Part shown: piece after piece, positions 1,132 to 36,314 of the stretch | Layout of the letters: each line of letters opens with the position of its first letter | How positions within the stretch are numbered: the stretch's first letter is position 1 | Virus record (IMG/VR): IMGVR_UViG_3300046517_002304 | Coordinates: 372,001-436,000 of that record | Strand: one strand, 5' to 3' | Length of the DNA stretch: 64,000 nucleotides | Notes under the pieces: model-generated | What the model saw: only the letters and a program-made list of their open reading frames with translations | The model's database searches: none | Told to the model about the DNA's origin: nothing | Made by a program: the position numbers and the translations under genes

Positions 1132-1472
1132 GATGGTTCCTTATGGATAACTAAGTTTCGAAAGGATGTTAAAATTTGATCATATTCATACGTAGCCGAA
1201 TTTCTTTCACTGTTTACCCATTCCGTAACCCACTGAATGGCCTTCGCCATATTCTCTTCTGTGATTGCGTCATAAGTCACCCAGCCATACTCGTCATCTA
1301 TCGTATAGCCAAACTCATGCCCATAATACGTTCTGCAAAATTTAAACTCAGCAATACTGTTATGGTGATACAAGCCTTTTTGATGCTTATCAGGAGTAAA
1401 CCCCCACTTAGTTAAGAAATCATGATCTGCTTGTGAAATGCCTTCTGGTAGATTCATGATTTCGCATTCCAC
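1128..1472 (-). CDS. hypothetical protein, 'LxxxGF' paralog family
   Basis: FLTKWGF near N-terminus; ITEENMAKAI helix. Confidence 0.6.
   Translation of the reverse strand: MECEIMNLPEGISQADHDFLTKWGFTPDKHQKGLYHHNSIAEFKFCRTYYGHEFGYTIDDEYGWVTYDAITEENMAKAIQWVTEWVNSERNSATYEYDQILTSFRNLVIHKEPS
1143..1153 (-). repeat. junction motif TAGTTATCCAT copy 1
   Basis: Exact; within last codons of 1128..1472, followed by AAGGAACCATC-ATG. Confidence 0.95.
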
Positions 1473-1834
1473 AAAGAATTTTCAATGCAGGCTAATTCTT
1501 CGACGGCTCTTTTATGATGTAGAAGAATTTCATTAGTATCATAAAGGCAGGATTTCATGATTTGCCTGATTGCCCAAGCTACGGTGCGACTGGTAATTTT
1601 TCTTATAAAAGTATTTACTTTGGGAAATTCTGGTGAATAATAATCAAGACAAAAGTATTCTTCTTCCCAATGCTGGCACGCAAAATGCATGCCTTTAATA
1701 GTTTTATGTCTGATGTTTATAACCTTAATGTCAGCATCAGGCAGGCCGACCTCATCATTCTTATAAAGATAAATTGGATCACCAAATCCAAACTTATGCA
1801 GAATAGCAATTTGTCTGCTGGTAAGCTTCTTCAC
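1454..1834 (-). CDS. hypothetical protein, 'LxxxGF' paralog family
   Basis: ILHKFGF; ITSRTVAWAI helix. Confidence 0.6.
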   Translation of the reverse strand: MKKLTSRQIAILHKFGFGDPIYLYKNDEVGLPDADIKVINIRHKTIKGMHFACQHWEEEYFCLDYYSPEFPKVNTFIRKITSRTVAWAIRQIMKSCLYDTNEILLHHKRAVEELACIENSLWNAKS

Positions 1835-2152
1835 TGTATCTCTACCCCGTTACGGAGCCACAAATTCCACTGAATCATTTCTAATCGTCTTTTGCGGATA
1901 CGACGATATTCTTCTCTGGTAATCAGATCATCGCTTTTCATAAAACGATGAACATAACAATCTCGTAGCACGGTTCTATCCGCTATATCAAGACGGGTGT
2001 CATTTAATAAATCAACAACTTCTTCATACTCTTGCTCTGTTATCTCACCTGAATCATTTAACTTGATTGCTGCTAAAAAAGCAAGAAAGCACAAAATTAA
2101 AAATGCCGAAATTATATAACAAGCCTTATTTGAATCAGACATTTTTGTTTCC

Positions 2153-2518
2153 TTAAGCGACAAAGAATCCGAAAAAGTCAATAGCATCAGACAAAACAAG
2201 AGTTTGCTTTGGAATCATTTCATCCAGATACTCTTTCGCTTGCTTTTTAATTAATGAAAATCCTTTTTCCACATTCTCTTTAGTCAGTTCATGAAAATGA
2301 TCGGGCCAGCCGTCTGGCCCAAGCTTAATACCGCCAGCTATGGAAAGCCAAACTGACCAGCCAGTTGCAGATGTATGCCTAATTAAAAGACCATCAAGAC
2401 TCTTGTGCCTGGATTCATCGCTTAACCATCCGATGGGACGCTCAATGCGATTAAAGCCGAAGTCCGATAATACCTGCTGCTCTTGATCGGTCAAAATCCT
2501 TTCATTAACCTTCATCAT
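2153..2518 (-). CDS. hypothetical protein, 'LxxxGF' paralog family
   Basis: VLSDFGF; LTKENVEKGF helix. Confidence 0.6.
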   Translation of the reverse strand: MMKVNERILTDQEQQVLSDFGFNRIERPIGWLSDESRHKSLDGLLIRHTSATGWSVWLSIAGGIKLGPDGWPDHFHELTKENVEKGFSLIKKQAKEYLDEMIPKQTLVLSDAIDFFGFFVA

Positions 2519-3245
2519 TTTTCACCCATGCCCTAGAAGCAAAACGGAAATAAGGCCACATCCTACCATGATAAGAAGAAGAAAAACGCGAATAAAAAAT
2601 TCTCTTTTCAACTGCTTGCTCATGATTGATCCCCGTTGCTAGTGGAAAAACAAACTTGCAACGGTTATTGTATCAGTTTTTTACAGTAAAAGTCAAGAGT
2701 AGGTTGGAACTATCTTGAGTTGTTTCATGATGCTCTTCAGAATGAGTTATCGGTTGCAAAGATTCGGCCCAAGCGATCAGTTCTTTTTCTTGTTTCTTAG
2801 CAATCTTATATTGCGTTTTCATATCTTCTTTATAAGCGACTTTGTGTCCAGGATAAGTCATTACAGCTAAAACCGGGTAACTGCAAGCAAAAATTTTACC
2901 GAATGTAATCCAATTTTCATAACTTGCTTCAGCAATAAAGCAAGCGACAAAAGGCATTCCTAATATGCATACTGTCCCCCACCAGAATAATGGGAACAGC
3001 AAGGCGCAGATTATCGGCGGGAAAGGTTTCACGATCAAATTATCCTAGGAAGTCTACCGGCGATGAGCCTTTCGATCCAAATCCTCAACAGAAACCAAAT
3101 CCCCTTTGAGCGTAGATTTAGGCTCTTCGTGGCCATTGAAGAATCGGATCATGCCTTCGTATTCTCGAACGATAACCCATTCTTCCGAGGGCCATGTAAA
3201 ACGATACCACCAGTAACGAACTACGCCAGTCATCATATCCCTTTT

Positions 3246-3668
3246 TCATCGTGGAAATTTGATTATGGCTGCACAGATCGCCAATGGCATTGTTTCTTCT
3301 TCTGATAAAACTTCAGTACCACCATCATCATAATTATTTATTACTCTCCATCCATCAAATTTGGAACTAACAGCAAGATATGCCGCTCTTTTTGTAGCCG
3401 CAATCCAATCAACAATAATCTTCTGTGCAGCATTTGCATCCGACGAAAACTTAGGCAAAGCATCAAGTGCGGCTTGCTCTGATCGGAAGAATTTGCCTCC
3501 TAACGGAAGATTATCCCAGCTAGTACTTTTGATAGGCTTATTATCCTTCCAAGCCCAATAAGGATAATCTTGTGGCCACATTGAACGTGCAGGATTATAT
3601 TCAACACATTCCAACCGCCATCCAATGGCTTTGGCAACTTCACGATCAATTTCAGGTGATGCAATCAT
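3246..3668 (-). CDS. phage ABA-sandwich-domain-like protein
   Basis: EIDREVAKAIGW...PKFSSDANAA...ETMPLAICAA pattern typical of this phage family. Confidence 0.5.
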   Translation of the reverse strand: MIASPEIDREVAKAIGWRLECVEYNPARSMWPQDYPYWAWKDNKPIKSTSWDNLPLGGKFFRSEQAALDALPKFSSDANAAQKIIVDWIAATKRAAYLAVSSKFDGWRVINNYDDGGTEVLSEEETMPLAICAAIIKFPR

Positions 3669-3688
3669 GTTGGTCCTATGGATAACTA
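3665..3688 (-). repeat. 24-bp direct repeat containing junction motif copy 2 (3678..3688)
   Basis: TAGTTATCCATAGGACCAACATGA, identical to 8531..8554; immediately follows the Nampt TAA stop, in frame. Confidence 0.95.
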
Positions 3689-5134
3689 TTAAAGATAGCT
3701 CTTAACTCTTTCTCTGATTTCAGAGAGAGTATATTCTTTAGTTATCTTACCATCGCGGAACACGGTTTCCAGATATCCGCCAGCCGCTTCTTCCTTAGTG
3801 GCGTTATCCTTAGTAAAGAATTGACCATTCTCATCCTTGTCAAGTCGCATCAATCCCTTATGCGATTTTTTCTTGTGGTCTGTAATTGGGTCTTTTTCAA
3901 TATCTCTAGATTCACCATTAACAACAACATTGGTTGCCTTGATGGCAAATCCGAAAGTGTCTCTGGAGTGATTGCGGAGGATACCGCCGACGCCGATAGT
4001 GAGGTTAGATGCGGCATAACCCATGTTCTTGAGACGAGACAGCGTTCGCTCATATCGCTCATAGTACATTCCATCACCGTAAATCAATCCAATTTTAGGA
4101 TTGAGAATTCGGTATCCCTTCTTATTAATAGTGCTGCCAAATTTCATGTCAAGAAGACGGATAGCTCCAAGGAATTCAGGTGTGCCGAACTTGGCTGACG
4201 GATCGCCACAGATAATATATTCTGGATTTCCACTATCGGGACGGAATACAACTTTACCGTCTCTGGAGAGGATGCGTGATTTAAGTTTTTCGGCGAAATC
4301 GGTTAATACAGTCCAGACGTTGTAGGTGTCTGAAACCACGGAACAGATTCCAGTCGGATAAAGATCAAGCATGTGATTAAATGCAGCCAATTCATCTTCT
4401 CTTCCGAAACTACACATTACAGAATGTTCAGATGCATTAGCGCTTAACATAATTGGACTATTTAAATCAGCATTATAATACCTGTTTAAAAAATCAAACG
4501 ATAACATCGTATCACTTCCAAGGTGATTAATCAAATGTGCTCCACCAGAAACATATGCGCTTTCTTCGGTATCGCAACCACGATATCCAAAGTCTACTGC
4601 GGTTAAATCCTTAAGAAAATACATGTCCTCATCAACCGTCTCGTTAAAGTATTGCTCAATTAAAGTTCTATACTTAAAACTATGAGTCGCTACAGTAGTT
4701 AAAAACCAAATCTTAAGCAGCAAGCTTTCCACAAATCCTACTGCCCAATGGAAATCATCTTTTGTATTAGCGACAGTCATTAAGGCATTTCTAATACTTA
4801 TCACAGAGCCTTCTACAGGCGCTTTAATTTCCAAAGGCCAGTAACCTAACTTACACAAATCTCTAATTTTATTTTCAACAGTTCTACTGTTGCTTCCAAG
4901 AATATGTTTTCTAATAAAAAGAAACTCTTCTCCCATTTCTGGAGTAATAGGTTTCACAAGATACTTTTTAAGGTAATACTGAAGACCAAAAAACAATGTC
5001 CTATCCCACAGACGATCATTGTTTCTGGCAGTTAGATAAGAATAAACGTATGATGTTCCTGGGCAATATTGCTCTAGATGACCTGTCTTATAGATGTCAG
5101 TTCTTCGGAGAATGTTCTCTTCAAGTAGTTCCAT
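3689..5134 (-). CDS. nicotinamide phosphoribosyltransferase family protein (Namat-like, NARP1)
   Basis: TDIYKTGH, FFGLQY, DFGYRG, ASEHSVMC, VVSDTY, RPDSG, IYGDG, RDTFGFAIKAT, KDPITD..KKSHKG motifs. Confidence 0.92.
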   Translation of the reverse strand: MELLEENILRRTDIYKTGHLEQYCPGTSYVYSYLTARNNDRLWDRTLFFGLQYYLKKYLVKPITPEMGEEFLFIRKHILGSNSRTVENKIRDLCKLGYWPLEIKAPVEGSVISIRNALMTVANTKDDFHWAVGFVESLLLKIWFLTTVATHSFKYRTLIEQYFNETVDEDMYFLKDLTAVDFGYRGCDTEESAYVSGGAHLINHLGSDTMLSFDFLNRYYNADLNSPIMLSANASEHSVMCSFGREDELAAFNHMLDLYPTGICSVVSDTYNVWTVLTDFAEKLKSRILSRDGKVVFRPDSGNPEYIICGDPSAKFGTPEFLGAIRLLDMKFGSTINKKGYRILNPKIGLIYGDGMYYERYERTLSRLKNMGYAASNLTIGVGGILRNHSRDTFGFAIKATNVVVNGESRDIEKDPITDHKKKSHKGLMRLDKDENGQFFTKDNATKEEAAGGYLETVFRDGKITKEYTLSEIRERVKSYL

Positions 5135-6810: not shown

Positions 6811-7701
6811 TCATATGACCTTAGTTTGATGAACGAATGGATCAGTAATGTCACAGAATGAATTAGTGGTATAAATCTTATCAAAGTAAAGCTTGAGTTC
6901 GTCCAGTCCCTTGCTGAAAATGCCATGAGGGATACAGAGAAATACTTTTCCGCAGTTCCGCGCCTTAAGAAGCTTGCCGATTTCTGTGAACGTGCGACCG
7001 CCATCACAGATGTCGTCTACAAGGAATACATCCACTTGCTTAAAATCATCACATGAAATTGAAGTATGGGTAATCTTACCAGTAGCAACGTCACGATGCT
7101 TATTACAACTCACCAGGTCCACACAGACAGATCCAAGCTGTTCGGTTGCAGAATACGCTCGCTTCAGCGCACCGCCGTCAGGAGCAATAACTACGACTTT
7201 CTTTAAATTATATTGTTCAACAGCATGCATTCCAATAAACTTCATTTTACGAATAAGAGAACGATTGATTAACGCCGGGGATACATCTGAGTGTTGCTCA
7301 AGTAATTCAACTGAATTATATCCTTGTGCATTGATAATAGGAGCAATTATATCTTTAAAATAACTGGTTCCACCTGAAACAAACTGACGATCAGATCTCG
7401 CTCCAAGCAAATATGGGAGATACAAAGAAATATCAGAACCCGCATGATCATTAGGAGCGAATTCAGTTTCTAAATTCTTAATAGCTGCCGTGGCACAAAG
7501 AATTAGCTCTAAATCTCTAAATGATGTAAACCTTGAAGATATCCTCCAAGAACTTTTTGTAGGGTAAGGAAAACCTTCTTTGCTTCCATGATTTTGAGGG
7601 AGGACAACAACGTCCTGCTGCCCATCGGGAAACTTGATAACTTTGTAATCAACATTATTATCATTGCTCGTTTGATGAGCAAGATTAATTTCTTTTGGCA
7701 T
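6811..7701 (-). CDS. ribose-phosphate pyrophosphokinase family protein (Adps-like, NARP1)
   Basis: KFPDGQ, PYLLGARSDR, APDGGALKR, LVDDICDGGRTF, HGIFSKG. Confidence 0.9.
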   Translation of the reverse strand: MPKEINLAHQTSNDNNVDYKVIKFPDGQQDVVVLPQNHGSKEGFPYPTKSSWRISSRFTSFRDLELILCATAAIKNLETEFAPNDHAGSDISLYLPYLLGARSDRQFVSGGTSYFKDIIAPIINAQGYNSVELLEQHSDVSPALINRSLIRKMKFIGMHAVEQYNLKKVVVIAPDGGALKRAYSATEQLGSVCVDLVSCNKHRDVATGKITHTSISCDDFKQVDVFLVDDICDGGRTFTEIGKLLKARNCGKVFLCIPHGIFSKGLDELKLYFDKIYTTNSFCDITDPFVHQTKVI

Positions 7702-8530: not shown

Positions 8531-8554
8531 TCATGTTGGTCCTATGGATAACTA
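8531..8554 (-). repeat. 24-bp direct repeat containing junction motif copy 3 (8544..8554)
   Basis: Identical to 3665..3688; its TAG is the stop codon of 8552..8836. Confidence 0.95.
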
Positions 8555-8836: not shown

Positions 8837-8847
8837 ATGGATAACTA
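8837..8847 (-). repeat. junction motif copy 4
   Basis: Exact; TAG is the stop of 8845..9135 and the next ATG follows with 0 nt spacing. Confidence 0.95.
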
Positions 8848-11526: not shown

Positions 11527-11537
11527 ATGGATAACTA
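11527..11537 (-). repeat. junction motif copy 5
   Basis: Exact; TAG is the stop of 11535..11756; followed by AGGAGTAAA-ATG. Confidence 0.95.
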
Positions 11538-12434: not shown

Positions 12435-13763
12435 TTATACCGAACCACCATTCTTTTGTCCAGCCAGTTTTTCTTGAAAATCTCTCTTGAGTTGCTTAAA
12501 TTTTTCTGGATTGGTTTCGCCGGAATCTCGCAATTGTTCAGCTAACTTACGGATTGTTATGGCGTCTTGTTTGTTTTTGTAATGGCCAAGATTAATATTG
12601 GTATAATATACTTGAATTCTAGAACGCCATAAACCATTCTTATACTCAGATACTCCGCTAAATCCAGAATTATTATTATAAGGTATATCTTGATCCTTTT
12701 TAAGATTTAAATTAAGACATCCCCAATTCTTGCCATTATAAATATCTCCAATTGTTGTAGGCGAAACATTATATTCAGACGCTATTTCTGCAATCGGCCT
12801 TTTGTTAGTCAAATGTTTGGCAATTTCAAGAACTTGGCTCTCGTTCAACAATGATAATGGATGGGTTTCTCCAAACATTTTAATAGGATGAATATAATGA
12901 CTAATATCTACTTTGTATAATACATCTTGCGTTGGTATAAACTCACGAATCATGTCTAAAAAATAAAGATAAGAAGAAGAGCCAATGCGAATAGCAGGAC
13001 ATTCTTTTGTTTTAAATGCACCTTTTTTATGATAAACATTACAATTTGTAATACCCATCTTTTTTAATTTATTGACAAGTATTTCAACTTCCGTAAAACT
13101 AAAACCATCTGTATGAAGTTTGGCATATCGTTGCTCTGAATTGTTTTCGCCATCATCACAAAACCATACGGCAACAATTCTAGGATTAAGCACTAAATTG
13201 TCGGGAACTATTTTAATTCTTCTCCCAATAGCGTTAAAAACATAGGAGTCATGGCCATCTCTTTGGTACCATGCTCGTTCTATGGCTGAAAATAATGGAT
13301 GATTTATTGTATGTATCGTACACGTTCCATTATCATAAATTGCTCTGCCATTTATGAAATGTGGCTTTGCAGCTAAACTTACCATCGTAAATTTTGATGA
13401 AAATGGCATTAAAGCATCAAATTTCCACTTTAAATAGTGTTGTTGTAGTAATCCATGCCTTTCGCAAAAATGAGAATTACAGCTTGTATGCTGTAACTTA
13501 GCACATGTTCCGTCTCCTAACATAGAGCCAGTAAGAATATCTGCTTGCAATTCTGAAAACTTATTAGGAATATCAACATTCTTCCATCTGGCACACTTAA
13601 GCGGTAATATTACACTATTTTCACTATCTCTAATTTTGTTAATTCTACCTAGTAGGTTAGCAAAAGTAATGCCAAAATAATCGGCAGATTGCTGCCTTGT
13701 ATGATTTAAGTAATAACTTGCAAATATTTCGTCACTGATTTCGGCAGATAATGATTTATCCAT
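12435..13763 (-). CDS. free-standing LAGLIDADG homing endonuclease with C-terminal HTH and AP2-like domains
   Basis: ILTGSMLGDG and VAVWFCDDG motifs; IAEIASEYNVSPTTI HTH; NNSGFSGV...WRSRI...NLGHY AP2 pattern. Confidence 0.85.
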   Translation of the reverse strand: MDKSLSAEISDEIFASYYLNHTRQQSADYFGITFANLLGRINKIRDSENSVILPLKCARWKNVDIPNKFSELQADILTGSMLGDGTCAKLQHTSCNSHFCERHGLLQQHYLKWKFDALMPFSSKFTMVSLAAKPHFINGRAIYDNGTCTIHTINHPLFSAIERAWYQRDGHDSYVFNAIGRRIKIVPDNLVLNPRIVAVWFCDDGENNSEQRYAKLHTDGFSFTEVEILVNKLKKMGITNCNVYHKKGAFKTKECPAIRIGSSSYLYFLDMIREFIPTQDVLYKVDISHYIHPIKMFGETHPLSLLNESQVLEIAKHLTNKRPIAEIASEYNVSPTTIGDIYNGKNWGCLNLNLKKDQDIPYNNNSGFSGVSEYKNGLWRSRIQVYYTNINLGHYKNKQDAITIRKLAEQLRDSGETNPEKFKQLKRDFQEKLAGQKNGGSV

Positions 13764-15832: not shown

Positions 15833-16372
15833 TTACACCATAGGTATCAAATATGCGGCAGGAACAGCATCCGTAAGCCAAACATTGTTAGTAGATAAAT
15901 AAAACTTAAAACCATCATCAAACATTCGCTCTGCTTGTACTTCAAAGATAAATACAGCGCCGCCGTGTCTTTTGCCTACAGCAGTAGCGGTTTCGATAGT
16001 TTCAGATAAATGAACATATTGTCTTGATTGCTTTAATAATCCAAGTCTAAAAATAGAGCCAACAGATAGATCACTTGTGCCATGATACAAAACTTCCGGC
16101 GGCTGAATAGCAGTTAACTGTAAATCAACAGGCAAAGAATGGCCTTGCCGCGCCCTAATTTTTGTTCTACTTGCATTTAATTCATAGCGATTTTTAGTAT
16201 CCTTCTCAACGATATGCATCAATAAACTTTGAGATATGCTAGTTTTTTTAACTAACTCTTCGACAAACGCCCATCCATTTTCATCTAGTGTAAGGCCAAC
16301 TTTACCTGGATTATGCCTAAGAATAAGGCACAGGTATTTCCCTAAGCTAGTAGATGATAGTCCTGCTGCCAT
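15833..16372 (-). CDS. kptA: RNA 2'-phosphotransferase (Tpt1/KptA)
   Basis: LILRHNP, KNRY, IRARQGHS, LYHGT, RQYVHLS, GKRHG. Confidence 0.92.
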   Translation of the reverse strand: MAAGLSSTSLGKYLCLILRHNPGKVGLTLDENGWAFVEELVKKTSISQSLLMHIVEKDTKNRYELNASRTKIRARQGHSLPVDLQLTAIQPPEVLYHGTSDLSVGSIFRLGLLKQSRQYVHLSETIETATAVGKRHGGAVFIFEVQAERMFDDGFKFYLSTNNVWLTDAVPAAYLIPMV

Positions 16373-16382: not shown

Positions 16383-16877
16383 TTAAATATGATTCAGAAG
16401 AAATCCCGGAACAGCCCCGCGAGTAAGCATAATCTTAGATTCTCCATCCACATCATACTCATTAGCGCAACAATTGCCCAGTTCAGGATAATCGTTGACA
16501 ATTTTCCATATTTTAGTTCCTAAATCGCTCTGCGGAAGCGAAAGATTAATCTTGCAAAGCCTACTGGAAAAATATCCATTACAAACAAAGATATATGGAA
16601 CAATATAATCGCCATCATCATCACTGATAGTTATCGCAGCAAAACGATTGGGTTTATCGTGGCATATCACTTCTTGAACATAATGCAAATATTTTAAAGA
16701 ACCATAAATCAATAATTCATTAACATCGCCATATTCCTCCAAGAACTCAATTTCACTATACTGCGAGTATAGCGGAACTTCGTCAAAGTAATTACGGATG
16801 AAGCGTGTAATCGGCCAATCTAAACCATTGGCGGCTATAACGTCTGTAAATTTATTGCGGCATTCGGGAATCATCAT
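16383..16877 (-). CDS. possible Imm15-like immunity protein
   Basis: FDEVPLYSQYSEIEFL...NELLI...ITI...PYIFV resembles Imm15 from memory; weak. Confidence 0.35.
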   Translation of the reverse strand: MMIPECRNKFTDVIAANGLDWPITRFIRNYFDEVPLYSQYSEIEFLEEYGDVNELLIYGSLKYLHYVQEVICHDKPNRFAAITISDDDGDYIVPYIFVCNGYFSSRLCKINLSLPQSDLGTKIWKIVNDYPELGNCCANEYDVDGESKIMLTRGAVPGFLLNHI

Positions 16878-17248: not shown

Positions 17249-17966
17249 TTCACATTAAGTTAGGTCAATTTGATCGAGGATGTGGGCCGGGAGCCGTAAC
17301 CATTCCTCCAACGAAAAACTAGTTTTCAAATTGTGAACCAGCCGACACTTCCCGCCACGATACCTCAAGCAAAATCCATCGGGAATTTCTTTGAACTTGT
17401 CCAGCCATATTTTTTCCGCAGAATGTTGGTCTGCAATGAACAAGTACGCAATTAAAACAATAGCTGGCCAGAAAACAGATGACAGTATAATAATAGGCAA
17501 TACCATTATCCACCACCCTTTACTCTACGTAAATAAGAAATGAAAACCATTTCCATATATCTCAATAACTTATGCACTTCTTCATTATTAAGATCTGATG
17601 GAAGCCGCAAAGCACCCTCAATAGAATTGCAACTCTTGGTATCGCTAATCATAATAGACGTATACCCTGAGTGCGGGGCTGGCGTACCAATCCGGCAATA
17701 AATGTCGTCAATTTGTTTTTCAATTCTCGTTTGATCATCTAGTGTTTGCATCTACGTCTCCTAAGTAAAATTGTTATTCGGGATAATCCTGTGCCTGTTC
17801 ATCAAGAGACTCTGCATTATAAGTAAGAATCTCTTGAATTTCCGCTCTTAGCTTTTTTGATACCTTCTTAACTGCTCCAATACGGAGCAAATAATCTTCA
17901 AACGCGGAGACAACGATTTTCCCGCCAATAAACTCTGCCAAGTAGTTTACGGTGCTTCTTTTCATT

Positions 17967-18743: not shown

Positions 18744-18754
18744 ATGGATAACTA
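18744..18754 (-). repeat. junction motif copy 6
   Basis: Exact; intergenic, downstream of a sigma70-type promoter, 13 nt before ATG 18730. Confidence 0.95.
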
Positions 18755-18807: not shown

Positions 18808-19486
18808 TCAATTTTATTGATAAATCCTCGGAGATATCAAAAACAAACGGCTTATTCATAGGCGTATATCTCTCATTTACAAGAGACGCATTAACGACAA
18901 TGGTTTTGCCGCGCAGCCTAAGTCCCCTTCCAGAGTGGATATGACCGTTCACGGCCACTAATGGCTGTATCTCATCAATTTTTTTCAGCAAAGACTTACT
19001 GCCTACTTGCTCGGGAACCGAACCCTCGTCATGTGCAATAGTCGTATCGCCATAACCGTAAGGAGGGCCATGCGTGACCAGAATATGGCAATCTGGAATC
19101 TGATTATATTTTTTATCTAAATCAGGCTCATCAAGATTAAACGCCCAATCGTAGAATCTTCTCTGCCATGGCGAGAAGTAAAATACGATCCCGTCAATTT
19201 CGCACCAGTTATCAGTGTAAAATTTACACTTAATGTCCGTTGGAACTAGATGAGGCGCAATCTCACCAATGAAGTCGTGATTTCCCCAGCAGGCGACTGC
19301 TCGTTTAACTGGCTGAGCATCCAGCCAATCCCTAAAGTCGCTATTCAGCCACGCCATTTGCTTGTGTATATCATGCATCCCGCGCGGCACTATATCACCT
19401 GCGATTACCAAAACATCGCATTCTGGAATATTAATAAGGTATCCATGAATATCAGATATAAATGCAATTCTAATCATTTTTTCCAT
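18797..19486 (-). CDS. metallophosphoesterase (calcineurin-like)
   Basis: SDIHG, AGDI, GNHD, THGPP, GHIH. Confidence 0.9.
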   Translation of the reverse strand: MEKMIRIAFISDIHGYLINIPECDVLVIAGDIVPRGMHDIHKQMAWLNSDFRDWLDAQPVKRAVACWGNHDFIGEIAPHLVPTDIKCKFYTDNWCEIDGIVFYFSPWQRRFYDWAFNLDEPDLDKKYNQIPDCHILVTHGPPYGYGDTTIAHDEGSVPEQVGSKSLLKKIDEIQPLVAVNGHIHSGRGLRLRGKTIVVNASLVNERYTPMNKPFVFDISEDLSIKLIDG

Positions 19487-21899: not shown

Positions 21900-21910
21900 A
21901 TGGATAACTA
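21900..21910 (-). repeat. junction motif copy 7
   Basis: Exact; 1 nt after the stop of 21912..22388, 8 nt before ATG 21891. Confidence 0.95.
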
Positions 21911-22416: not shown

Positions 22417-22427
22417 ATGGATAACTA
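22417..22427 (-). repeat. junction motif copy 8
   Basis: Exact; TAG is the stop of 22425..22805. Confidence 0.95.
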
Positions 22428-25077: not shown

Positions 25078-25088
25078 ATGGATAACTA
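25078..25088 (-). repeat. junction motif copy 9
   Basis: Exact; in-frame second stop 3 nt after the map TAA. Confidence 0.95.
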
Positions 25089-25091
25089 ACA

Positions 25092-25838
25092 TTATAGCCA
25101 AATCTCACTGTCTGTCAAGATTTCTGCATGGTTTTTACATACTAAAATTGTATGCTCAAATTGCGCAGACATTCCACCATCCTTTGTTCGCGCAGGCCAT
25201 CCTTCCATAATAATCTCTGAACTACCTGTGTTGATAATCGGTTCAATGGTAAAAGTCATACCCTCATCAATAATCTGACCGCTGTCCTTTTCTGCTTCAT
25301 GATAAATGGTCGGGGATTCATGAAACTCTAGGCCAACTCCATGCCCTGTAAAAGAGCTACAAACAGAAAAACCACATCGGTTAACATACCGACTTATTTC
25401 ATACCCAATGTTGCCTAAGTAATTGCCATTCTTTACTTGCTTTATTCCGATATACAAAGAGTTTTTTGCTACCTGTAACAGCTTTGCCGCATTATGGCTT
25501 ACTTCGCCTACTGGATAGGTAAAACAGGTATCTCCATAATATCCGTCAACTATAGTCGCAACATCAATGCCAACTATGTCACCGTTTTTAATTACAGTGC
25601 CGTCTGGTATACCATGACAAACAAAATTATTAACGGATATACATGTCGCAGCAGGAAAACTTTTATAGTTCAAAGGCGCAGGTATACCGCCATTTTTTCT
25701 TATAAAATCTTCTATTAGATTGTTCAGCTCTAGTGTAGTTACGCCTGCTTTAACGAACGGCTTAATAAAAACTAAAACATCAGCAGATAGCTTGCTGCTT
25801 TTTCTAATACCGGCGATTTCGCTATCTGTTTTAATCAA
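25092..25838 (-). CDS. map: type I methionine aminopeptidase
   Basis: CISVN..VCHGIP, GDIVGIDV, GYYGDT, FTGHGVG..FHE, FTIEPI, SAQFEHT. Confidence 0.95.
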   Translation of the reverse strand: MIKTDSEIAGIRKSSKLSADVLVFIKPFVKAGVTTLELNNLIEDFIRKNGGIPAPLNYKSFPAATCISVNNFVCHGIPDGTVIKNGDIVGIDVATIVDGYYGDTCFTYPVGEVSHNAAKLLQVAKNSLYIGIKQVKNGNYLGNIGYEISRYVNRCGFSVCSSFTGHGVGLEFHESPTIYHEAEKDSGQIIDEGMTFTIEPIINTGSSEIIMEGWPARTKDGGMSAQFEHTILVCKNHAEILTDSEIWL

Positions 25839-31938: not shown

Positions 31939-32982
31939 TCATACCAGCCCTTTCTTTGATAAAACCTTTAGACCACTATCGGTAATGTGATACCTGTTTG
32001 ATACCTGAACCAATGGTTTAGTATCTAAACTTGACAGTAGTAATAAGGGCATAATATGAACTTCCATTTCCTCTGTGCTCACGCCTACGGCACTACAAAG
32101 CGACTTCAAAGATTTTCCATGTTCCTTGTTCATAGCAAGTGCTATCATAACATCTATCTGCTTTTTGTCAATACCGTCTTCATCAATACCTTTTCTTTTG
32201 GCGACAATTTCTACCGCATCAAGAATACCGACATTCATTCTTTTAGACGCAAATAATGCCTGCTGACTAAAGGCAATAGCTTGTCTTGGAATTTTCGTAA
32301 GCTGTGCCACTTTCATACAAGCTGCCGCTACCCAACCAGTATTCATCGCAACAATTTCCGCAACTTCAGACAACGTGTAGGATTCTAATCTAACAGATAT
32401 AAATCTGGACTCAAACGGCAAAGGCAGTTGTCCTCGTTCCGTTGTAGCCACTACCCAATAAACGTTTTTACAGTCTAATTCCTCTCGGGCCGTCACCAGG
32501 CGAGAAGTTTTTTGCTCTAAAGCCGCCAATAATACTTCCCTCGCATGAGCCGGCAATGAGTGAATTTCATCCATAAAAATCACCATCGGAGGAATTTCGT
32601 AATAATCCTTACCGTTCACTTTGCTAAGAGGCGTCAGTCCAAGATATTCTTCTTCTAACTTCTTGTCTATTCTATCAAATAAGTATTCAGCAGTCAATAC
32701 TTCTCCTGCTTGAAGCTCTAGAAATGGCAGTTCCAGCACATCGGCAAAAAGCTTGGCGACGGTGGTCTTGCCAACGGATCTTGGGCCAGCGAGTAAAATA
32801 TTCACGCCAGATGCGGCTCTATCTTCTTTGAGCAATCCGGCAAAGGCAAGATCAGACAATGCGTCAATGGCATTATCATTGCCGATGAAGTTAGAGAAAG
32901 AACATGACGGATTATCTCTGTCAAGTAACAGTCGGATTTCGTCCGGCGACAAGGCATCAAAGATGCGTTTGGCTTGTGTCAT
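31939..32982 (-). CDS. ruvB: RuvB-like Holliday junction branch-migration ATPase
   Basis: FSNFIG, LLAGPRSVGKTT, IFMDEIH, VATTERGQL..PFESRF, PRQA, GIDEDG and C-terminal winged helix. Confidence 0.75.
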   Translation of the reverse strand: MTQAKRIFDALSPDEIRLLLDRDNPSCSFSNFIGNDNAIDALSDLAFAGLLKEDRAASGVNILLAGPRSVGKTTVAKLFADVLELPFLELQAGEVLTAEYLFDRIDKKLEEEYLGLTPLSKVNGKDYYEIPPMVIFMDEIHSLPAHAREVLLAALEQKTSRLVTAREELDCKNVYWVVATTERGQLPLPFESRFISVRLESYTLSEVAEIVAMNTGWVAAACMKVAQLTKIPRQAIAFSQQALFASKRMNVGILDAVEIVAKRKGIDEDGIDKKQIDVMIALAMNKEHGKSLKSLCSAVGVSTEEMEVHIMPLLLLSSLDTKPLVQVSNRYHITDSGLKVLSKKGLV

Positions 32983-32997
32983 TTATTTGCTAAATTT

Positions 32998-33852
32998 CTA
33001 GGCCACACGCTGGTGGAGCGACTGAAGCTTAGATTTCGCTTGTTTCAGAACCATGCGAACGTACCTTGGGGTACATCCACGTTGAACACTTATATCAATA
33101 ACAGACTTCTTTTGCAATAGGGATTTTATGATATCCTGTTCAGCAGGCTTAAGCTGATTCAATACTTCATAATCAACATCTGCCTGAGGCTCTACCAGCT
33201 TAATAGACTTATGGCCAACTTCTCCCATCATCACCCGATTTAGCGGGAGCAGCAAAAACTTTTTGATTTTCCGATTATTCCACCCAAGCTTAGCGAATAC
33301 TTCGTCTAACGTAGCTCTTCGCCCAAGTTCGTTGTCTAACACATTCTTAATTTTATGAAAATTACGAATAGCCTGTGCAATTAATGAACTTTTAATTCTA
33401 ATTGGGCTATCCTTCAATGCGGGTCCGCACACCCTTCTCTTAACACTTGTGTACATAAAAGAAAATACAGGAACAGATAAATTTGTATAATACCACAGCA
33501 CATCATACGCCTCCAGATAAGTCGCCCCAAAATCCATCCTTTTAGATCTGGTAATAGTCTCTAAGCCGCCATAATGATTCTTAAGAAAAACATGAATATC
33601 ATTTTGATTTTCTTTGATAATGGCAACATCTTGCTCAGGCAAGTCAACCTGTTGATTGTTAAAAATAGTGTTTCGTAAGACTGATAAATCCATCCCTAAT
33701 CGTCTGGCATGATTAGCCAACAATAAGTTGGCCTTGACGATTTTGGAAATGACTTCTGATTGAACTTCTGTTGATTCAGGCACCGACCATGGTGATTTCA
33801 TTGCTTTAACATTCCTGCTTTTTTGAGAACCAATGTGTTGTATTCTGGCCAT
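32998..33852 (-). CDS. divergent sigma-70-family transcription factor
   Basis: PIRI..., LGRRATLDEVFAKLG (region 3), L.QLKPAEQDII...ISVQRGCTPRYVRMVLKQAKSKL (region 4 HTH). Confidence 0.65.
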   Translation of the reverse strand: MARIQHIGSQKSRNVKAMKSPWSVPESTEVQSEVISKIVKANLLLANHARRLGMDLSVLRNTIFNNQQVDLPEQDVAIIKENQNDIHVFLKNHYGGLETITRSKRMDFGATYLEAYDVLWYYTNLSVPVFSFMYTSVKRRVCGPALKDSPIRIKSSLIAQAIRNFHKIKNVLDNELGRRATLDEVFAKLGWNNRKIKKFLLLPLNRVMMGEVGHKSIKLVEPQADVDYEVLNQLKPAEQDIIKSLLQKKSVIDISVQRGCTPRYVRMVLKQAKSKLQSLHQRVA

Positions 33853-34175
33853 GCGCCAGCTAACAGTTCATCTACGCTCACCCACAATGCTACGCCTTCG
33901 GAACTTGATGCTATTCTTCCAGACCATTTAGAAACTAAATACGTAGTTGTCCAGTAATCTCCGTTTTGAGAGGCATGAATCCAATCACACGCTTCAACTT
34001 TTATATTGGTTTCTTCGTAAGCTTCTCTAATAGCAGCAGTTTTAGTAGATTCAAATCCGGTTAATTTTCCTCCGGGCAAACTGCATAACATTTGGTTCTT
34101 CGGCGAACATACAGCTAAAATCTTCCCTTCGTTAATTAAAAGAATACAGGCAGCGGAAGTATGTCCAATCATCAT
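33798..34175 (-). CDS. Nudix hydrolase
   Basis: Nudix box LPGGKLTGFESTKTAAIREAYEETNI. Confidence 0.9.
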   Translation of the reverse strand: MMIGHTSAACILLINEGKILAVCSPKNQMLCSLPGGKLTGFESTKTAAIREAYEETNIKVEACDWIHASQNGDYWTTTYLVSKWSGRIASSSEGVALWVSVDELLAGAWPEYNTLVLKKAGMLKQ

Positions 34176-34183
34176 GTATCTCT

Positions 34184-34194
34184 ATGGATAACTA
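34184..34194 (-). repeat. junction motif copy 10
   Basis: Exact; 4 nt after the stop of 34199..35320, 8 nt before the Nudix ATG. Confidence 0.95.
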
Positions 34195-34198
34195 AAAA

Positions 34199-35320
34199 CT
34201 ATGCAGGCATTCTAGTTGCGTGCAAGTACCCCTGGTAGCTACCGTCCATTAACTTCTCTCTTCCGCATAAACAAACAGTGATTGCCTCTCTCGGATCGTC
34301 AATATGATTTTCCTGACAATACTGAAGAGTCGGATCAATCCATTCTTCTTTCCCCTTAAATCTAATCACTTCTCTCAACAGAATTTTTCTCATAATCTCC
34401 GCAGATGGACGAGGACAATAAACTTGATTCGGGAATCTGCTGGCCAGAGCGCCGGACATCAAACTTTTAAACAACGGCATGTCATTTACCGTAGCAAAGC
34501 ATAAGAGTTTTATATTCCTATGCGAATTTTCTCTGTAATTAATTTTTCGTATTTCAGAACGATGATCCAAAAGACCCAGCAGGTATTGTAGGCTGGATTC
34601 CGGAGCCTTTTCTAGCTCTTCAATGACCAAGAGCTTTGGCTTATATTTAGAATTTAATAATGTTTTTTCAGCCCCAGCCTTAGTGGTTGACGATGCGTCC
34701 ATTTTTAAAACCGCATCTTCGCCTACCATTTGTACAAGAGCATGTAGTATCTCAGTTTTTCCGCAGCCGGGAGGGCCTGCATACAAAACGTTAAACTTAT
34801 TCAGTCCTCCGGATTCTTCAAACGCTACGAGCGCGGAGTGGAGTATCTGTATCTGAGCATCCCTATCATAGATATGATCGAAGTGATTCCCTAAATCAAG
34901 ATTTAATTTCCCAATTTCTATCTTCCCTATACTTGCTCCGTCAGCCACCGTCAAAGGCTCTACGGTGGCACCAGAATCAACCGGCTCAACAACGGTCATC
35001 GGCGTGCCATCTTCGCTGAGAATCTCCCATCGGCCATTATTAGAACATGCGCCTACAGCCATGCCTACCAATCGCTCAAACTGGATATCATCAACTTCCG
35101 CCCCGTTTGACTTTCTCTTTTTAAAATCTAAACGAGTCCTGTAGATGTAATTATCGCCATGGGCAAGCGGCTTAGGGGTCATCCAGCTAATGCAGGACCA
35201 GCCTTGCTTCCCTCTGTCGCCCGCAGTAGCGCGGCCAATGATACCGTTAATATTCTGTCTAATAATATCTTCATTCAAACGACGTTTGCTGACCTTATTA
35301 AGCAGAATGGTATGCGACAT
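34199..35320 (-). CDS. AAA+ ATPase with unique N-terminal domain
   Basis: Walker A GPPGCGKT, Walker B LVIEELEK, FATVN, ALASRF. Confidence 0.85.
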   Translation of the reverse strand: MSHTILLNKVSKRRLNEDIIRQNINGIIGRATAGDRGKQGWSCISWMTPKPLAHGDNYIYRTRLDFKKRKSNGAEVDDIQFERLVGMAVGACSNNGRWEILSEDGTPMTVVEPVDSGATVEPLTVADGASIGKIEIGKLNLDLGNHFDHIYDRDAQIQILHSALVAFEESGGLNKFNVLYAGPPGCGKTEILHALVQMVGEDAVLKMDASSTTKAGAEKTLLNSKYKPKLLVIEELEKAPESSLQYLLGLLDHRSEIRKINYRENSHRNIKLLCFATVNDMPLFKSLMSGALASRFPNQVYCPRPSAEIMRKILLREVIRFKGKEEWIDPTLQYCQENHIDDPREAITVCLCGREKLMDGSYQGYLHATRMPA

Positions 35321-35351
35321 TTGTTCCTTTTCGGTTTGGGAAGTGGTCCTT

Positions 35352-35362
35352 ATGGATAACTA
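35352..35362 (-). repeat. junction motif copy 11
   Basis: Exact; in-frame second stop after the TGA of 35366..35725; followed by AAGGACC. Confidence 0.95.
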
Positions 35363-35763
35363 TTTTCAACCTTCACCGCCGATATCAGTCAAAAACACAT
35401 TCAGCAGGCACTTGGTATGAGTGTATCGGTAAGAGTGGTATCCGAACACCCAATCCTGAAGCGGGCCAAAATCCTTCGGCGTTCGGGGCTTGAAATTAAA
35501 AACAAGATTCGCCAAATGGTAATAAATTGCTCCACATTCTCTCGCAAGACGAACGTGGCCAGTCCCATAATCCTTTGGATTTGCCAGTAAATCATCATTC
35601 TCTTCCTTGAGAGCAACCAAGAGTTCGTCAAGATAAGAATAAATTTTTTGCCATTCCGTAACATGAGACTGGAGGCAGTCTTCAAGTATCGTCTCAATTT
35701 TGGCTACGAGGTCGTTTGAGTTCATTTTGTGCCTCCAAAGTTGGTGATTCCCCGAATATATAA

Positions 35764-35792
35764 ACTATAACCACGTAATGGAGATAAGTCAA
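35764..35792 (-). promoter_or_regulatory. sigma70-type promoter
   Basis: TTGACT-17 bp-TATAGT upstream of 35725. Confidence 0.5.
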
Positions 35793-36002
35793 GTGAAAGC
35801 ATTTGAAGAATTTTTGAACGATAAAGGTGAGAGTCTAGAAGAAGTCAAGAAGTGGCTGCAAAAAGCTATCGATCCCAAGCACGCCGGTTTTTGTACTCCT
35901 ATGACAAAAGATACCTGCACGCCAAGACGCAAGGCTTTAGCAAAACGCTTTAAGAGCGGCGACATTCATGAAGACAACTTGAAGAAAGACGAAAAGAAGT
36001 AA
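35778..36002 (+). CDS. small basic phage protein
   Basis: KAFEEFL...KWLQKAI...CTPMTKDTCTPRRKALAKRFK; divergent plus-strand gene; real start may be GTG 35793. Confidence 0.6.
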   Translation: MEISQVKAFEEFLNDKGESLEEVKKWLQKAIDPKHAGFCTPMTKDTCTPRRKALAKRFKSGDIHEDNLKKDEKK

Positions 36003-36122
36003 TGGCGGAACCAGTGGTAATAAGTGTGTCTAGCTATATTTTCATGACTGGCGTTACTGCACTATTCGTCTTTGCGCTTATCCACGACACTTTCTTTGGA
36101 GAGCCGTGGGGCTGGAAGTAAC

Positions 36123-36290
36123 TTAGGATCGGCAAGAAAAGAAAAATAGGAAAATAGCCGATGCCCAAAATGTCAGACTAATTAAAACAACCGCCCAACT
36201 GTTCCGATTCAAAAGTCCAAGAATGCCGGTTGTGGCAGGCAGCTTATCTTCAAAAGAGCCTTGCTTCATATCGTCCAATGAAAATGGCAT
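36123..36290 (-). CDS. small putative membrane protein (55 aa)
   Basis: Read by hand: MPFSLDD...WAVVLISLTFWASAIFLFFFSCRS*; 13 nt after motif copy 12. Confidence 0.5.
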   Translation of the reverse strand: MPFSLDDMKQGSFEDKLPATTGILGLLNRNSWAVVLISLTFWASAIFLFFFSCRS

Positions 36291-36303
36291 GTTTATCTTT
36301 CTA

Positions 36304-36314
36304 ATGGATAACTA
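36304..36314 (-). repeat. junction motif copy 12
   Basis: Exact; TAG is the stop of 36312..37037. Confidence 0.95.

What the first reader, a model, noticed from the sequence alone, without database searches (positions are those of the whole stretch)
1143..36314. Strand-polarised 11-mer TAGTTATCCAT at 12 gene junctions (stop-motif-RBS-start unit)
Seen: exact copies at 1143, 3678, 8544, 8837, 11527, 18744, 21900, 22417, 25078, 34184, 35352 and 36304, plus a 1-mismatch copy at 58477. All are on the coding strand; I found no exact copy on the other strand. My rough chance expectation is about 0.1 copy, assuming about 35% GC. Although the region is almost all coding, every copy is at a gene boundary. 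The TAG is the upstream gene's stop in 5 copies and an in-frame second stop in 4. Two copies lie 1-4 nt after a stop and one lies in the last codons. The next ATG is 0-38 nt away, often via AGGA. One copy is inside a sigma70 transcript leader (18744), one abuts ATG with 0 nt spacing (8837), and the variant follows a terminator, so a simple promoter model is awkward. Inference: (a) an RNA-level termination/re-initiation, antitermination or processing signal (the phage encodes its own RRF; UAGUUAUCC is, from memory, complementary to GGAUAACUA near 16S helix 8, which is unverified); (b) an operator or promoter for the phage sigma-like factor at 32998; or (c) a recombination joint making accessory genes exchangeable cassettes, analogous to PeSL elements of T4-like phages. 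TTATCCATA is also one mismatch from a DnaA box.
Basis: partly seen in the sequence, partly recalled or inferred. Interest (0 to 1): 0.88.

Follow-up and report, generated by a model that had tools for sequence, protein, structure and literature searches.

The report
Huge phage's own promoter motif
A 511-kb uncultured phage carries well over 100 near-identical copies of a short DNA word (core AGTTATCC, usually TAGTTATCCAT) in front of its small gene units. It is most likely the phage's own promoter, packed between the stop codon of one gene and the start codon of the next.

Summary
All 12 exact copies are at the stated coordinates, on the window's minus (coding) strand, against about 0.03 expected.

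The window is bases 372,001-436,000 of a 511,233-bp viral contig. In 154 kb of that contig the core AGTTATCC-N-T occurs 125 times on the coding strand and 7 times on the other.

I read it as a phage-specific promoter with no -35 element. No transcript data were available, so this is inferred:
- It heads units of 1-4 coupled genes.
- It directly follows strong intrinsic terminators.
- It is the only recurrent signal in about 30 kb that lack good sigma-70-type sites.
- It sits 14 nt upstream of a tRNA-Arg gene.
- It sits in front of a structured non-coding stretch that ends in a terminator.

A "not G, then A" signal 8 nt after the 11-mer marks the likely transcript start. This is the A of the ATG in 34 copies, so those mRNAs would be leaderless.

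One feature is unexplained. A stop triplet (TAG, TGA or TAA) sits on the core's 5' edge in 121 of 125 copies, and upstream genes almost never read into the core.

This is a new variant of a known kind. The polymerase or sigma factor that reads it is unidentified.

The parts
1143..1153 (-). Motif copy TAGTTATCCAT. The upstream ORF reads through it and stops at +23. ATG 11 nt downstream.
3678..3688 (-). Motif copy directly after the TAA stop of the NAMPT gene. ATG 9 nt downstream.
8544..8554 (-). Motif copy whose TAG is the upstream stop. It shares 15 nt downstream of the 9-nt core (about 24 nt in all) with copy 3678, followed here by only a 10-codon ORF.
8837..8847 (-). Motif copy whose TAG is the upstream stop, with the ATG abutting it (0 nt). 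This is the one copy that does not fit a transcript start 8 nt downstream.
11527..11537 (-). Motif copy whose TAG is the upstream stop. AGGAG, then ATG 9 nt downstream.
18744..18754 (-). Motif copy 24 nt downstream of a sigma-70-like promoter (18807-18779). ATG 13 nt downstream.
21900..21910 (-). Motif copy 1 nt after the upstream TAG stop. ATG 8 nt downstream, with no SD.
22417..22427 (-). Motif copy whose TAG is the upstream stop. ATG 28 nt downstream.
25078..25088 (-). Motif copy starting 2 nt after the -10 hexamer of a 12/12 sigma-70-like promoter (25118-25091). ATG 38 nt downstream.
34184..34194 (-). Motif copy 4 nt after the upstream stop. It heads the unit NUDIX, sigma-like protein, clamp-loader-like ATPase.
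35352..35362 (-). Motif copy heading the AAA ATPase gene (34199-35320). ATG 31 nt downstream.
36304..36314 (-). Motif copy whose TAG is the upstream stop. ATG 13 nt downstream.
37221..37231 (-). Thirteenth core copy (TAGTTATCCCT). It lies 38 nt downstream of the predicted start of a sigma-70-like promoter (37303-37276) and antisense inside the plus-strand His_Phos gene. It may be a chance copy.
58477..58487 (-). Core variant TAGTTATCTAT that abuts an intrinsic terminator. ATG 26 nt downstream, after AGGAG.
58495..58533 (-). Intrinsic terminator (16-bp stem, then a T-run) whose T-run runs into the variant motif.
36931..36941 (-). AAGTTATCCAT (a TAA-type variant of the core) inside gene 36312-37037. 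Function doubtful.
32998..33852 (-). Sigma-70-family-like protein, a candidate reader of the motif. The link is not shown.
25091..25118 (-). Consensus sigma-70-type promoter (TTGACA-16-TATAAT), representative of the separate, host-type promoter class in this phage.

Best explanation
The motif is a promoter used by the phage's own transcription machinery. A block of about 13 bp (t-TAGTTATCC-N-T-W-A) is recognised on DNA with no -35 partner. I predict that transcription starts 8 +/- 1 nt after the 11-mer. That places the block at about -19 to -7, the geometry of a -10-type element read by a bacterial-type RNA polymerase.

Each copy heads a mini-operon of 1-4 translationally coupled genes. In the commonest arrangement the predicted first base of the RNA is the A of the ATG, so the mRNA is leaderless and needs no Shine-Dalgarno sequence.

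Because the genome is packed, the upstream gene ends on a stop triplet that overlaps the first one or two bases of the core.

Shown: the anatomy, the counts, the strand rule, the positions relative to genes, terminators and RNA genes, and the downstream position signal.
For: 1. Abundance and polarity. Strict core: 92 coding-strand copies against 1 in 145 kb, with about 0.7-1.0 expected per strand. Relaxed core: 125 against 7 in 154 kb. One-mismatch cores occur only at background level, and there is no conservation from -30 to -2.
2. Operon heads. Junctions without the motif have a median gap of 2 nt and 99 of 224 overlap. Motif junctions never overlap (map of L076).
3. Strong intrinsic terminators whose T-run abuts the motif occur at contig 300828, 326037, 327409 and 277547, and at window 58533-58495 before the variant at 58477. 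The gene 8-26 nt downstream then has no other place for a promoter.
4. Targets that are not translated. TGAGTTATCCAT ends 14 nt upstream of tRNA-Arg. The copy at L180:14698 is followed by a 114-nt structured non-coding stretch (z = -4.5) that ends in a terminator.
5. Six of the 7 opposite-strand copies form back-to-back divergent pairs or a tandem set in one intergenic control-like region.
6. About 30 kb of dense array has no sigma-70-like site of 11/12 or better. The window has 8-9 near-consensus ones. The phage therefore has a separate host-type promoter class.
7. Start-site-like signal. At offset 18, G occurs in 1 of 92 copies. At offset 19, A occurs in 67 of 92. This holds in the 11-nt class (12 of 13, as ATC-ATG) and in long-leader copies (21 of 44).
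8. Spacing to the ATG is 8 nt in 34 copies and 11 nt in 13. Of 56 short spacers, 43 lack an SD. The phage's sigma-70-type promoters also sit 6 nt from an ATG at 57669-57642 and at 37047-37074 on the plus strand.
9. Copies do not share flanks, so the conservation reflects selection, not recent duplication.
10. Precedent. Jumbo phages carry highly conserved motifs of about 10 nt centred near -10 upstream of early operons. These were later shown to be promoters. Jumbo phages without their own polymerase encode sigma homologues (PMC7598289).
Against: - No transcript data.
- The reader of the motif is unidentified. The sigma-like protein has no detectable relatives and only weak family matches.
- Copy 8837 has its ATG directly after the 11-mer, upstream of the predicted start.
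- In SD-containing spacers the AGGA would lie upstream of the predicted start.
- A DNA-only promoter does not explain why upstream genes stop at the core's 5' edge. By gene models, 51 end on TAG against 6 that read past (P = 1.6e-18). 121 of 125 copies carry TAG, TGA or TAA on the edge. Stops at +10 would be equally compact but are rare.
- No diverged relative carries the motif, so there is no evolutionary test.
Confidence: 0.72

Rival explanations
1. RNA-level gene-junction element. On polycistronic RNA, the sequence UAGUUAUCC-N-U next to the stop codon would act in one of three ways. It could hold or re-position the terminating ribosome (by pairing with rRNA or binding a phage factor such as the RRF system) so that it restarts at the SD-less AUG 16-19 nt downstream. 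It could be an endoribonuclease site that yields mRNAs with very short leaders. It could need to stay free of translating ribosomes.
For: - A stop triplet sits on the core's 5' edge in 121 of 125 copies. Upstream genes end there rather than reading in (51 against 6).
- The distance to the ATG is fixed at 8 or 11 nt, and most of these spacers lack an SD.
- Where the T of TAG is replaced, TGA or TAA is recreated one base upstream.
- The phage encodes an RRF.
- GGATAACTA exists in enterobacterial 16S.
Against: - Five copies abut strong terminators, so they would rarely be transcribed from upstream.
- Copies precede a tRNA gene and a non-coding terminated unit.
- Copies occur back-to-back on both strands in an intergenic region.
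- 21 of 92 copies have no stop within 10 nt upstream, and about a third have leaders of 19-183 nt.
- At 25078 the sigma-70 transcript would begin inside the motif.
- The motif has no self-structure and no conserved partner sequence.
- The host 16S is unknown. From general knowledge, the helix-8 region lies far from the mRNA channel.
Confidence: 0.1
2. The motif is primarily a recombination joint. The invariant core would be the crossover site, by short homology or a site-specific enzyme, at which small-gene cassettes are gained, lost and shuffled. Any promoter activity would be secondary or absent.
For: - The motif bounds units of 1-4 small genes of unknown function in a region of at least 140 kb, at densities up to 2 per kb.
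- Stops use only the invariant first bases of the core (TAG, TGA-G, TAA-G). Stops that depend on the variable bases after the core (+10) are avoided. A cassette would need exactly this for its last gene to stay intact after a crossover within the core.
- Copies 3678 and 8544 share an extra 15 nt, and 8544 is followed by a truncated ORF, a possible recombination scar.
- Precedent: PeSL elements of T4-type phages (PMC2839356, PMC4122927).
Against: - Identity is only about 9-13 bp, far shorter than PeSLs.
- No recombinase is linked to it.
- The only other contig carrying these genes is 100% identical, so no breakpoint could be examined.
- A joint alone explains none of the following: strict co-orientation with genes, the downstream not-G/A signal, the fixed distance to the ATG, or the positions before tRNA and non-coding units and after terminators.
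Confidence: 0.07
3. Another DNA-level site that is not a promoter. Candidates are an operator for a repressor or shut-off protein, a DnaA-box-like titration site, origin iterons, or strand-specific nick sites like those in T5 or phiKMV-type phages.
For: - TTATCC-A-T-A resembles TTATCCACA.
- Three copies lie just downstream of strong sigma-70-like promoters, as an operator would.
- A 3 x 46-nt tandem and inverted pairs lie next to UvrD-like helicase genes and look iteron-like.
- From general knowledge, conserved one-strand motifs first taken for promoters turned out to be nick sites in phiKMV-like phages.
Against: - The DnaA consensus fails at its most critical positions. Box position 8 is always T, position 7 is variable, and the invariant AG upstream is not part of a DnaA box.
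- More than 100 copies have no sigma-70-type promoter to operate on.
- Tight coupling to gene starts and to a downstream start-like signal is not expected of nick, origin or titration sites.
Confidence: 0.06

Closest known systems
Early promoter motifs of RNAP-encoding jumbo phages (phiKZ, AR9, phiR1-37), read by virion RNA polymerases (PMC7598289)
   Same: A phage-specific, highly conserved motif of about 10 nt with no -35 element. It was found bioinformatically upstream of many small early operons on the coding strand and is centred near -10.
   Different: Those motifs are AT-rich and belong to phages with split beta/beta' polymerases. Here the core contains G and CC, no phage polymerase gene has been seen in the 154 kb examined, near-consensus sigma-70 promoters co-exist, and a stop triplet is built into the 5' edge.
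T4 late promoter TATAAATA, read by host core RNA polymerase with gp55/gp33 and the sliding clamp (established knowledge)
   Same: A -10-region-only promoter with an almost invariant short sequence and no -35 element. It occurs in dozens of copies, often overlapping the end of the preceding gene in a packed genome. Here, as in T4, a sigma-like gene lies beside clamp-loader-like genes.
   Different: The sequence is different and longer (13 against 8 bp). The downstream genes are accessory or early-looking, not structural. No gp55, gp33 or clamp relationship has been shown.
PeSL (promoter-early stem-loop) cassettes of T4-type phages (PMC2839356, PMC4122927)
   Same: Repeated regulatory sequences that flank small ORFs of unknown function in plastic regions. 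Proposed to double as recombination joints for modular shuffling.
   Different: PeSLs are composite: a near-consensus sigma-70 promoter plus a stem-loop. This element is a non-sigma-70 word of 9-13 bp with a stem-loop beside it in only about 5 copies. Breakpoint evidence is lacking.
Promoters of single-subunit (T7-type, mitochondrial-type) RNA polymerases (established knowledge)
   Same: One contiguous, sharply conserved block close to the start site, with almost no tolerated variants. Many identical copies lie on the coding strand.
   Different: In those promoters the block runs up to or across +1. Here the conserved block ends about 7 nt before the predicted start, which fits a multisubunit enzyme better. 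No such polymerase gene has been seen.
Termination-reinitiation signals (TURBS of caliciviruses and influenza B) and bacterial translational coupling (established knowledge)
   Same: A conserved sequence next to a stop codon with a restart AUG nearby. The downstream cistron lacks its own ribosome-binding site.
   Different: TURBS lies upstream of an overlapping stop/start and pairs with 18S rRNA. Here the motif also occurs after terminators, before a tRNA gene and on both strands in intergenic DNA, and no rRNA partner could be tested.

Membership tests
Phage-specific -10-region-only promoter (T4-late or jumbo-phage early type) | Short, highly conserved motif without a -35 element, co-oriented with and upstream of genes or operons | tested here: met
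   125 coding-strand copies against 7 on the other strand. No conservation from -30 to -2. The motif heads units of 1-4 coupled genes.
Phage-specific -10-region-only promoter (T4-late or jumbo-phage early type) | Primary transcript 5' ends at a fixed distance downstream | not testable with these tools
The only evidence is indirect: G in 1 of 92 copies at offset 18 and A in 67 of 92 at offset 19.
Phage-specific -10-region-only promoter (T4-late or jumbo-phage early type) | Acts independently of translation, so it also serves RNA genes and restarts transcription after terminators | tested here: met
   A copy ends 14 nt upstream of tRNA-Arg. A copy precedes a structured non-coding stretch that ends in a terminator. 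Five terminators abut a copy. This is positional evidence only.
Phage-specific -10-region-only promoter (T4-late or jumbo-phage early type) | A cognate phage sigma factor or polymerase | tested here: inconclusive
   A sigma-70-family-like protein is at 32998-33852: Pfam region 3 E = 0.0045 (below cut-off), PHROG sigma E = 1e-3, Atlas feature score 0.97 to viral Sigma70_r3 clusters. No link to the motif is shown. No polymerase gene was seen.
Sigma-70 (host housekeeping) promoter | TTGACA-like -35 and TATAAT-like -10 hexamers 16-18 bp apart | tested here: not met
   No upstream conservation. At the equivalent of the -10 hexamer's key second position the motif has an invariant C or the variable N. 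The phage's true sigma-70-like sites are a separate set.
PeSL cassette (T4-type phages) | Composite of a sigma-70 early promoter and an adjacent stem-loop | tested here: not met
   No sigma-70 hexamers. A hairpin lies beside only about 5 copies.
PeSL cassette (T4-type phages) | Lies at insertion, deletion or replacement breakpoints between related genomes | not testable with these tools
   No diverged relative was found. The second contig is 100% identical.
Termination-reinitiation or ribosome-tethering signal | Works inside a translated polycistronic mRNA, with a stop codon close to the restart codon | tested here: inconclusive
   Met in form by 51-71 copies, with the stop on the core edge and the ATG 16-19 nt later. 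Not met by copies after terminators, before the tRNA or non-coding unit, or with 19-183-nt leaders.
Termination-reinitiation or ribosome-tethering signal | Complementarity to an accessible rRNA segment of the host | not testable with these tools
   The host is unknown: there is no close bacterial relative of the ALDH gene and no informative tRNA or rRNA. GGATAACTA was verified only in a Serratia 16S printed in PMC9387219.
DnaA box | TT(A/T)TNCACA 9-mer | tested here: not met
   The motif reads TTATCC-N-T-W. Box position 7 is the variable base and position 8 is T in all copies. The invariant AG upstream lies outside the box. The consensus is from established knowledge.

The most novel reading that the evidence does not exclude
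The element is more than a promoter. It would be a roughly 19-nt all-in-one gene junction in which the stop codon is a functional, selected part. There are two possible reasons. The invariant core could be the crossover point that makes each small-gene unit a self-contained, portable cassette, with the stop kept on the cassette's own side. Or the RNA copy of the motif must stay untranslated, because it is bound or processed to couple termination to SD-less or leaderless initiation.
Probability: 0.25. Interest if true: 0.75.

Novelty: new variant of a known kind. Interest (0 to 1): 0.58.

Why it matters
- Huge phages are known almost only from metagenomes, and their gene regulation is largely undescribed. 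This gives a concrete, testable regulatory code for one of them: a single 13-bp word that marks well over 100 transcription units across at least 140 kb.
- It predicts a large class of leaderless mRNAs.
- It separates a phage-specific regulon from a smaller set of host-type sigma-70 promoters.
- It would allow operon and timing annotation of about 200 genes of unknown function.
- It gives a compact orthogonal promoter for engineering, once its reader is found.
- The rule that genes stop on the edge of the core and do not read into it is not explained by promoter function. If it reflects cassette portability, it would show how huge phages assemble large accessory-gene arrays.

Tried and rejected
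- Relatives:
  - Megablast of 20 kb against phage records found nothing.
  - The sigma-like protein has no tblastn hit and no homologue among 5.8 billion proteins except itself.
  - The clamp-loader-like protein points to a 595-kb uncultured phage at 34% identity. Its 41-kb neighbourhood has no copy of the motif and no comparable k-mer.
  - NAMPT relatives in metagenomes (46-64% identity) lack the motif. Their repeated k-mers are ordinary tandem repeats.
  - A second contig with the same genes, from another run, is 100% identical.
- Other viral contigs that contain the 14- or 15-mer have single, chance-level hits. The one with two hits is AT-rich and unrelated.
- Host inference from the ALDH gene failed, with best hits at 38% identity or below.
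- Rfam and tRNA scans of the window were empty.
- A full-text search for the motif found only 16S sequences, primers and unrelated sequence matches.
- Rejected ideas:
  - Sigma-70 -10 element: the key base position is C or N.
  - MotA-type box: there is no conserved -10 downstream.
  - Recent duplication: the flanks are not shared.
  - Tandem in-frame double stops: stops 1-10 nt upstream show no frame preference.
  - TAG recoding: TAG is an ordinary stop elsewhere, 44 of 372 modelled genes outside the motif.
- My crude count of open frames that read across the core is inflated by the downstream gene's own frame. I did not use it.
- One look-up by exact protein failed because the gene call differs.

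Full report
**The observation**

All 12 exact copies of TAGTTATCCAT are at the stated coordinates. All are on the window's minus strand and none on the plus strand. With one mismatch allowed there are 17 hits, against 1.47 in shuffles. The exact 11-mer is expected about 0.03 times per strand from composition. It is the most over-represented k-mer in the window.

**Where the window comes from, and the true extent**

The window is bases 372,001-436,000 of a 511,233-bp viral contig, IMGVR_UViG_3300046517_002304. I fetched more of this contig with motif scans and by walking with proteins. That gave 154,463 bp covering 269,199-308,816, 314,048-362,384 and 369,493-436,000.

The conserved unit is t-TAGTTATCC-N-T-W-A:
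- Position 10 is A in 56 copies, G in 17, C in 11 and T in 8.
- The T at position 11 is invariant.
- Nothing is conserved from -30 to -2.

Counts:
- The strict 9-mer occurs 92 times on the coding strand and once on the other strand in 145 kb, with about 0.7-1.0 expected per strand.
- The 8-mer core AGTTATCC-N-T occurs 125 times against 7 in 154 kb.
- One-mismatch cores are at background level.
- Copies do not share flanks, so the word itself is under selection.

Density:
- It is about 2 per kb at 278-305 kb and 1-4 per 5 kb up to 409 kb.
- It is zero in the last 27 kb of the window.
- The array is still dense at the left edge of my data, so the genome total is unknown.

**Anatomy around the copies**

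- The motif heads units of 1-4 genes.
- Junctions inside units have a median gap of 2 nt, and 99 of 224 overlap. Motif junctions never overlap.
- The distance from the 11-mer to the ATG is 8 nt in 34 copies, 11 nt in 13, and 9-13 nt in 9 more. One is 0 nt and the rest are 19-183 nt.
- Of 56 short spacers, 43 have no Shine-Dalgarno-like sequence.

**Evidence that it acts in transcription, not translation**

1. Strong intrinsic terminators abut the motif with their T-run. They are at contig 300828, 326037, 327409 and 277547, and at window 58533-58495 before the variant at 58477. The next gene starts 8-26 nt later, so any promoter must be the motif itself.
2. A TGA-variant copy ends 14 nt upstream of a tRNA-Arg(TCT) gene.
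3. The copy at L180:14698 is followed by a 114-nt non-coding stretch, not an ORF. The stretch folds well (z = -4.5) and ends in a 10-bp GC-rich hairpin plus T-run. This is the layout of a small-RNA gene.
4. Six of the 7 opposite-strand copies lie in one intergenic region at 270-275 kb. They form back-to-back pairs 10 nt apart and a 3 x 46-nt tandem, as divergent promoters would.
5. About 30 kb of dense array contain no sigma-70-like site of 11/12 or better. The window holds 8-9 near-consensus TTGACA-16/17-(TG)TATAAT sites on the coding strand. The phage therefore has a distinct host-type promoter class, and the motif is the only recurrent candidate signal for the arrays.

**Predicted start site**

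Counting from the T of TAG:
- Offset 18 is G in only 1 of 92 copies.
- Offset 19 is A in 67 of 92.
- The A is kept in the 11-nt class (12 of 13, read as ATC-ATG) and is enriched in long-leader copies (21 of 44, against 31% background).

From general knowledge, a pyrimidine at -1 and a purine at +1 is the usual start context of bacterial-type polymerases. With +1 at offset 19 the conserved block spans about -19 to -7. The 34 copies with 8-nt spacing would then give leaderless mRNAs, which explains both the fixed spacing and the missing SD. The phage's sigma-70-type promoters show the same habit: TATAAT-N6-ATG at 57669-57642 and TAAAAT-N6-ATG for the plus-strand gene at 37081. This start site is an inference.

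**Who reads it**

This is unknown. The protein at 32998-33852 is sigma-70-family-like, with a weak Pfam region 3 match, a PHROG sigma match, and nearest Atlas clusters that are viral Sigma70_r3 proteins. It sits in a unit headed by copy 34184, beside clamp-loader-like ATPases. It has no detectable homologues. No polymerase gene was seen in the 60 ORFs that I scanned myself or among JGI's precomputed Pfam labels on the two loci that show them. Most of the 372 modelled genes in the 145 kb were not scanned. The review PMC7598289 states two relevant points:
- Jumbo phages with their own polymerases have conserved motifs of about 10 nt near -10 upstream of early operons. These were found bioinformatically and later confirmed as promoters.
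- Jumbo phages without such polymerases encode sigma homologues.

**The unexplained part**

A stop triplet sits on the 5' edge of the core in 121 of 125 copies:
- TAG in 106, using the core's AG.
- TGA in 11, using the core's A.
- TAA in 3.
- One TAG directly in front of the core.

It is the real end of an open frame of at least 40 codons in 71 copies. By gene models, 51 upstream genes end on the motif's TAG and only 6 read past it. One third would be expected by frame (P = 1.6e-18). In over half the copies a frame-shifted gene could end equally compactly on TAA or TAG at +10, yet that arrangement is seen only about twice. Compaction alone therefore does not explain the rule, and neither does a DNA-only promoter.

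I see two candidate explanations and tested neither:
- Portability. If units are exchanged by crossovers within the invariant core, only stops built from the unit's own bases plus invariant core bases survive the exchange.
- The RNA copy of the motif on read-through transcripts must not be translated.

**Rejected readings**

- DnaA box: box position 8 is always T and position 7 is variable.
- Sigma-70 promoter: there are no hexamers.
- Recent duplication: the flanks are not shared.
- TAG recoding: TAG is a normal stop elsewhere.
- 16S helix-8 pairing: the host is unknown, and the tRNA, non-coding and terminator contexts argue against a translation-specific role.

**Comparison and verdict**

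The element works like the compact promoters of T4 (late), of phiKZ- and AR9-type jumbo phages (early), or of single-subunit polymerases, all of which lack a -35 element. It differs from them in sequence, in copy number and rigidity, in its likely leaderless output, and in the built-in stop.
- Classification: a new variant of a known kind.
- Confidence that it is a promoter: 0.72.
- Interest: 0.58, mainly for the junction architecture and as an entry point into huge-phage regulation.

Noticed in passing
window 37047-37677 (+) and 37221-37303 (-): This is the only clear plus-strand gene in the region, a histidine-phosphatase-family protein at 37081-37677. It has a sigma-70-like promoter whose -10 ends 6 nt before its ATG, so the mRNA would be leaderless. 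A near-consensus sigma-70-like promoter and a motif copy lie antisense inside it.
   Followed up: partly
window 57635-57669 and 55600-55637 (-): Two 12/12 sigma-70-type promoters with an extended TG place an ATG 6 and 9 nt after the -10 hexamer. Leaderless or near-leaderless mRNAs therefore seem common in this phage even outside the motif class.
   Followed up: partly
window 39833-40294, 25092-25838, 15833-16372 (-): The phage encodes translation- and RNA-related proteins: ribosome recycling factor (Pfam E = 1.9e-26), an M24 methionine-aminopeptidase-like protein, and a Tpt1/KptA RNA 2'-phosphotransferase. An RNA-ligase-like gene lies elsewhere on the contig (L106:5847-6530).
   Followed up: partly
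window 3689-5134, 6811-7701, 33798-34175 (-): There is an NAD-salvage-type gene set: NAMPT, a phosphoribosyltransferase or PRPP-synthetase-like protein, and a NUDIX hydrolase. CoaBC-like flavoprotein genes are elsewhere on the contig (L063:1577-3363).
   Followed up: no
window 12435-13763 (-): A 442-aa ORF combines a LAGLIDADG endonuclease domain with a C-terminal region that matches phage HNH-endonuclease families. It is probably a free-standing homing endonuclease.
   Followed up: no
window 51452-54368 (-): A TnpB/Cas12f-like ORF (51452-53071) overlaps the 3' end of a full-length aldehyde dehydrogenase gene (52899-54368) by about 170 nt as ORFs. GC content rises to 44% at 56-60 kb. This may be a recently acquired segment. 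The closest bacterial ALDH is only 38% identical.
   Followed up: partly
window 40459-42747 (-): Four small ORFs begin with the same 14 nt (ATGAAAGCAGAAGT). They are probably a small paralogous family.
   Followed up: no
window 3678-3664 and 8544-8530 (-): These two copies share 15 extra identical bases after the core (through ATGA). At 8544 this ATG opens only a 10-codon ORF. It may be a scar of a recombination or duplication event at the motif.
   Followed up: partly
L180:14842-14978, 16769-16796, 17586-17631, 19232-19277 (contig about 270-275 kb): One region has motif copies on both strands: a 3 x 46-nt tandem, back-to-back pairs 10 nt apart, and a 12-nt-arm palindrome of the TGA-variant just upstream of tRNA-Arg. 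It lies next to UvrD-like helicase genes (L180:12897-14700). The opposite-strand copies share a further conserved tail (A-K-CT-W-AGGTAC). It could be a divergent promoter cluster for small RNAs or an origin-like control region.
   Followed up: partly
contig 278-309 kb versus 314-409 kb: The variable tenth base is mixed (A 19, G 14, C 8, T 8) where the array is densest. Elsewhere it is almost always A (37 of 43). TGA-type variants cluster at 269-274 kb. The motif may therefore have regional sub-classes.
   Followed up: partly
L174:2466-2550 and L180:16813-16887: The phage carries tRNA genes, Leu(TAA) and Arg(TCT), inside the small-gene arrays. Only the Arg gene has a motif copy directly upstream.
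   Followed up: yes
window 38343-39326, 44049-45080, 49346-50449 (-): A MoxR-type AAA+ ATPase and two VWA-domain proteins lie in the motif-free right part of the window.
   Followed up: no
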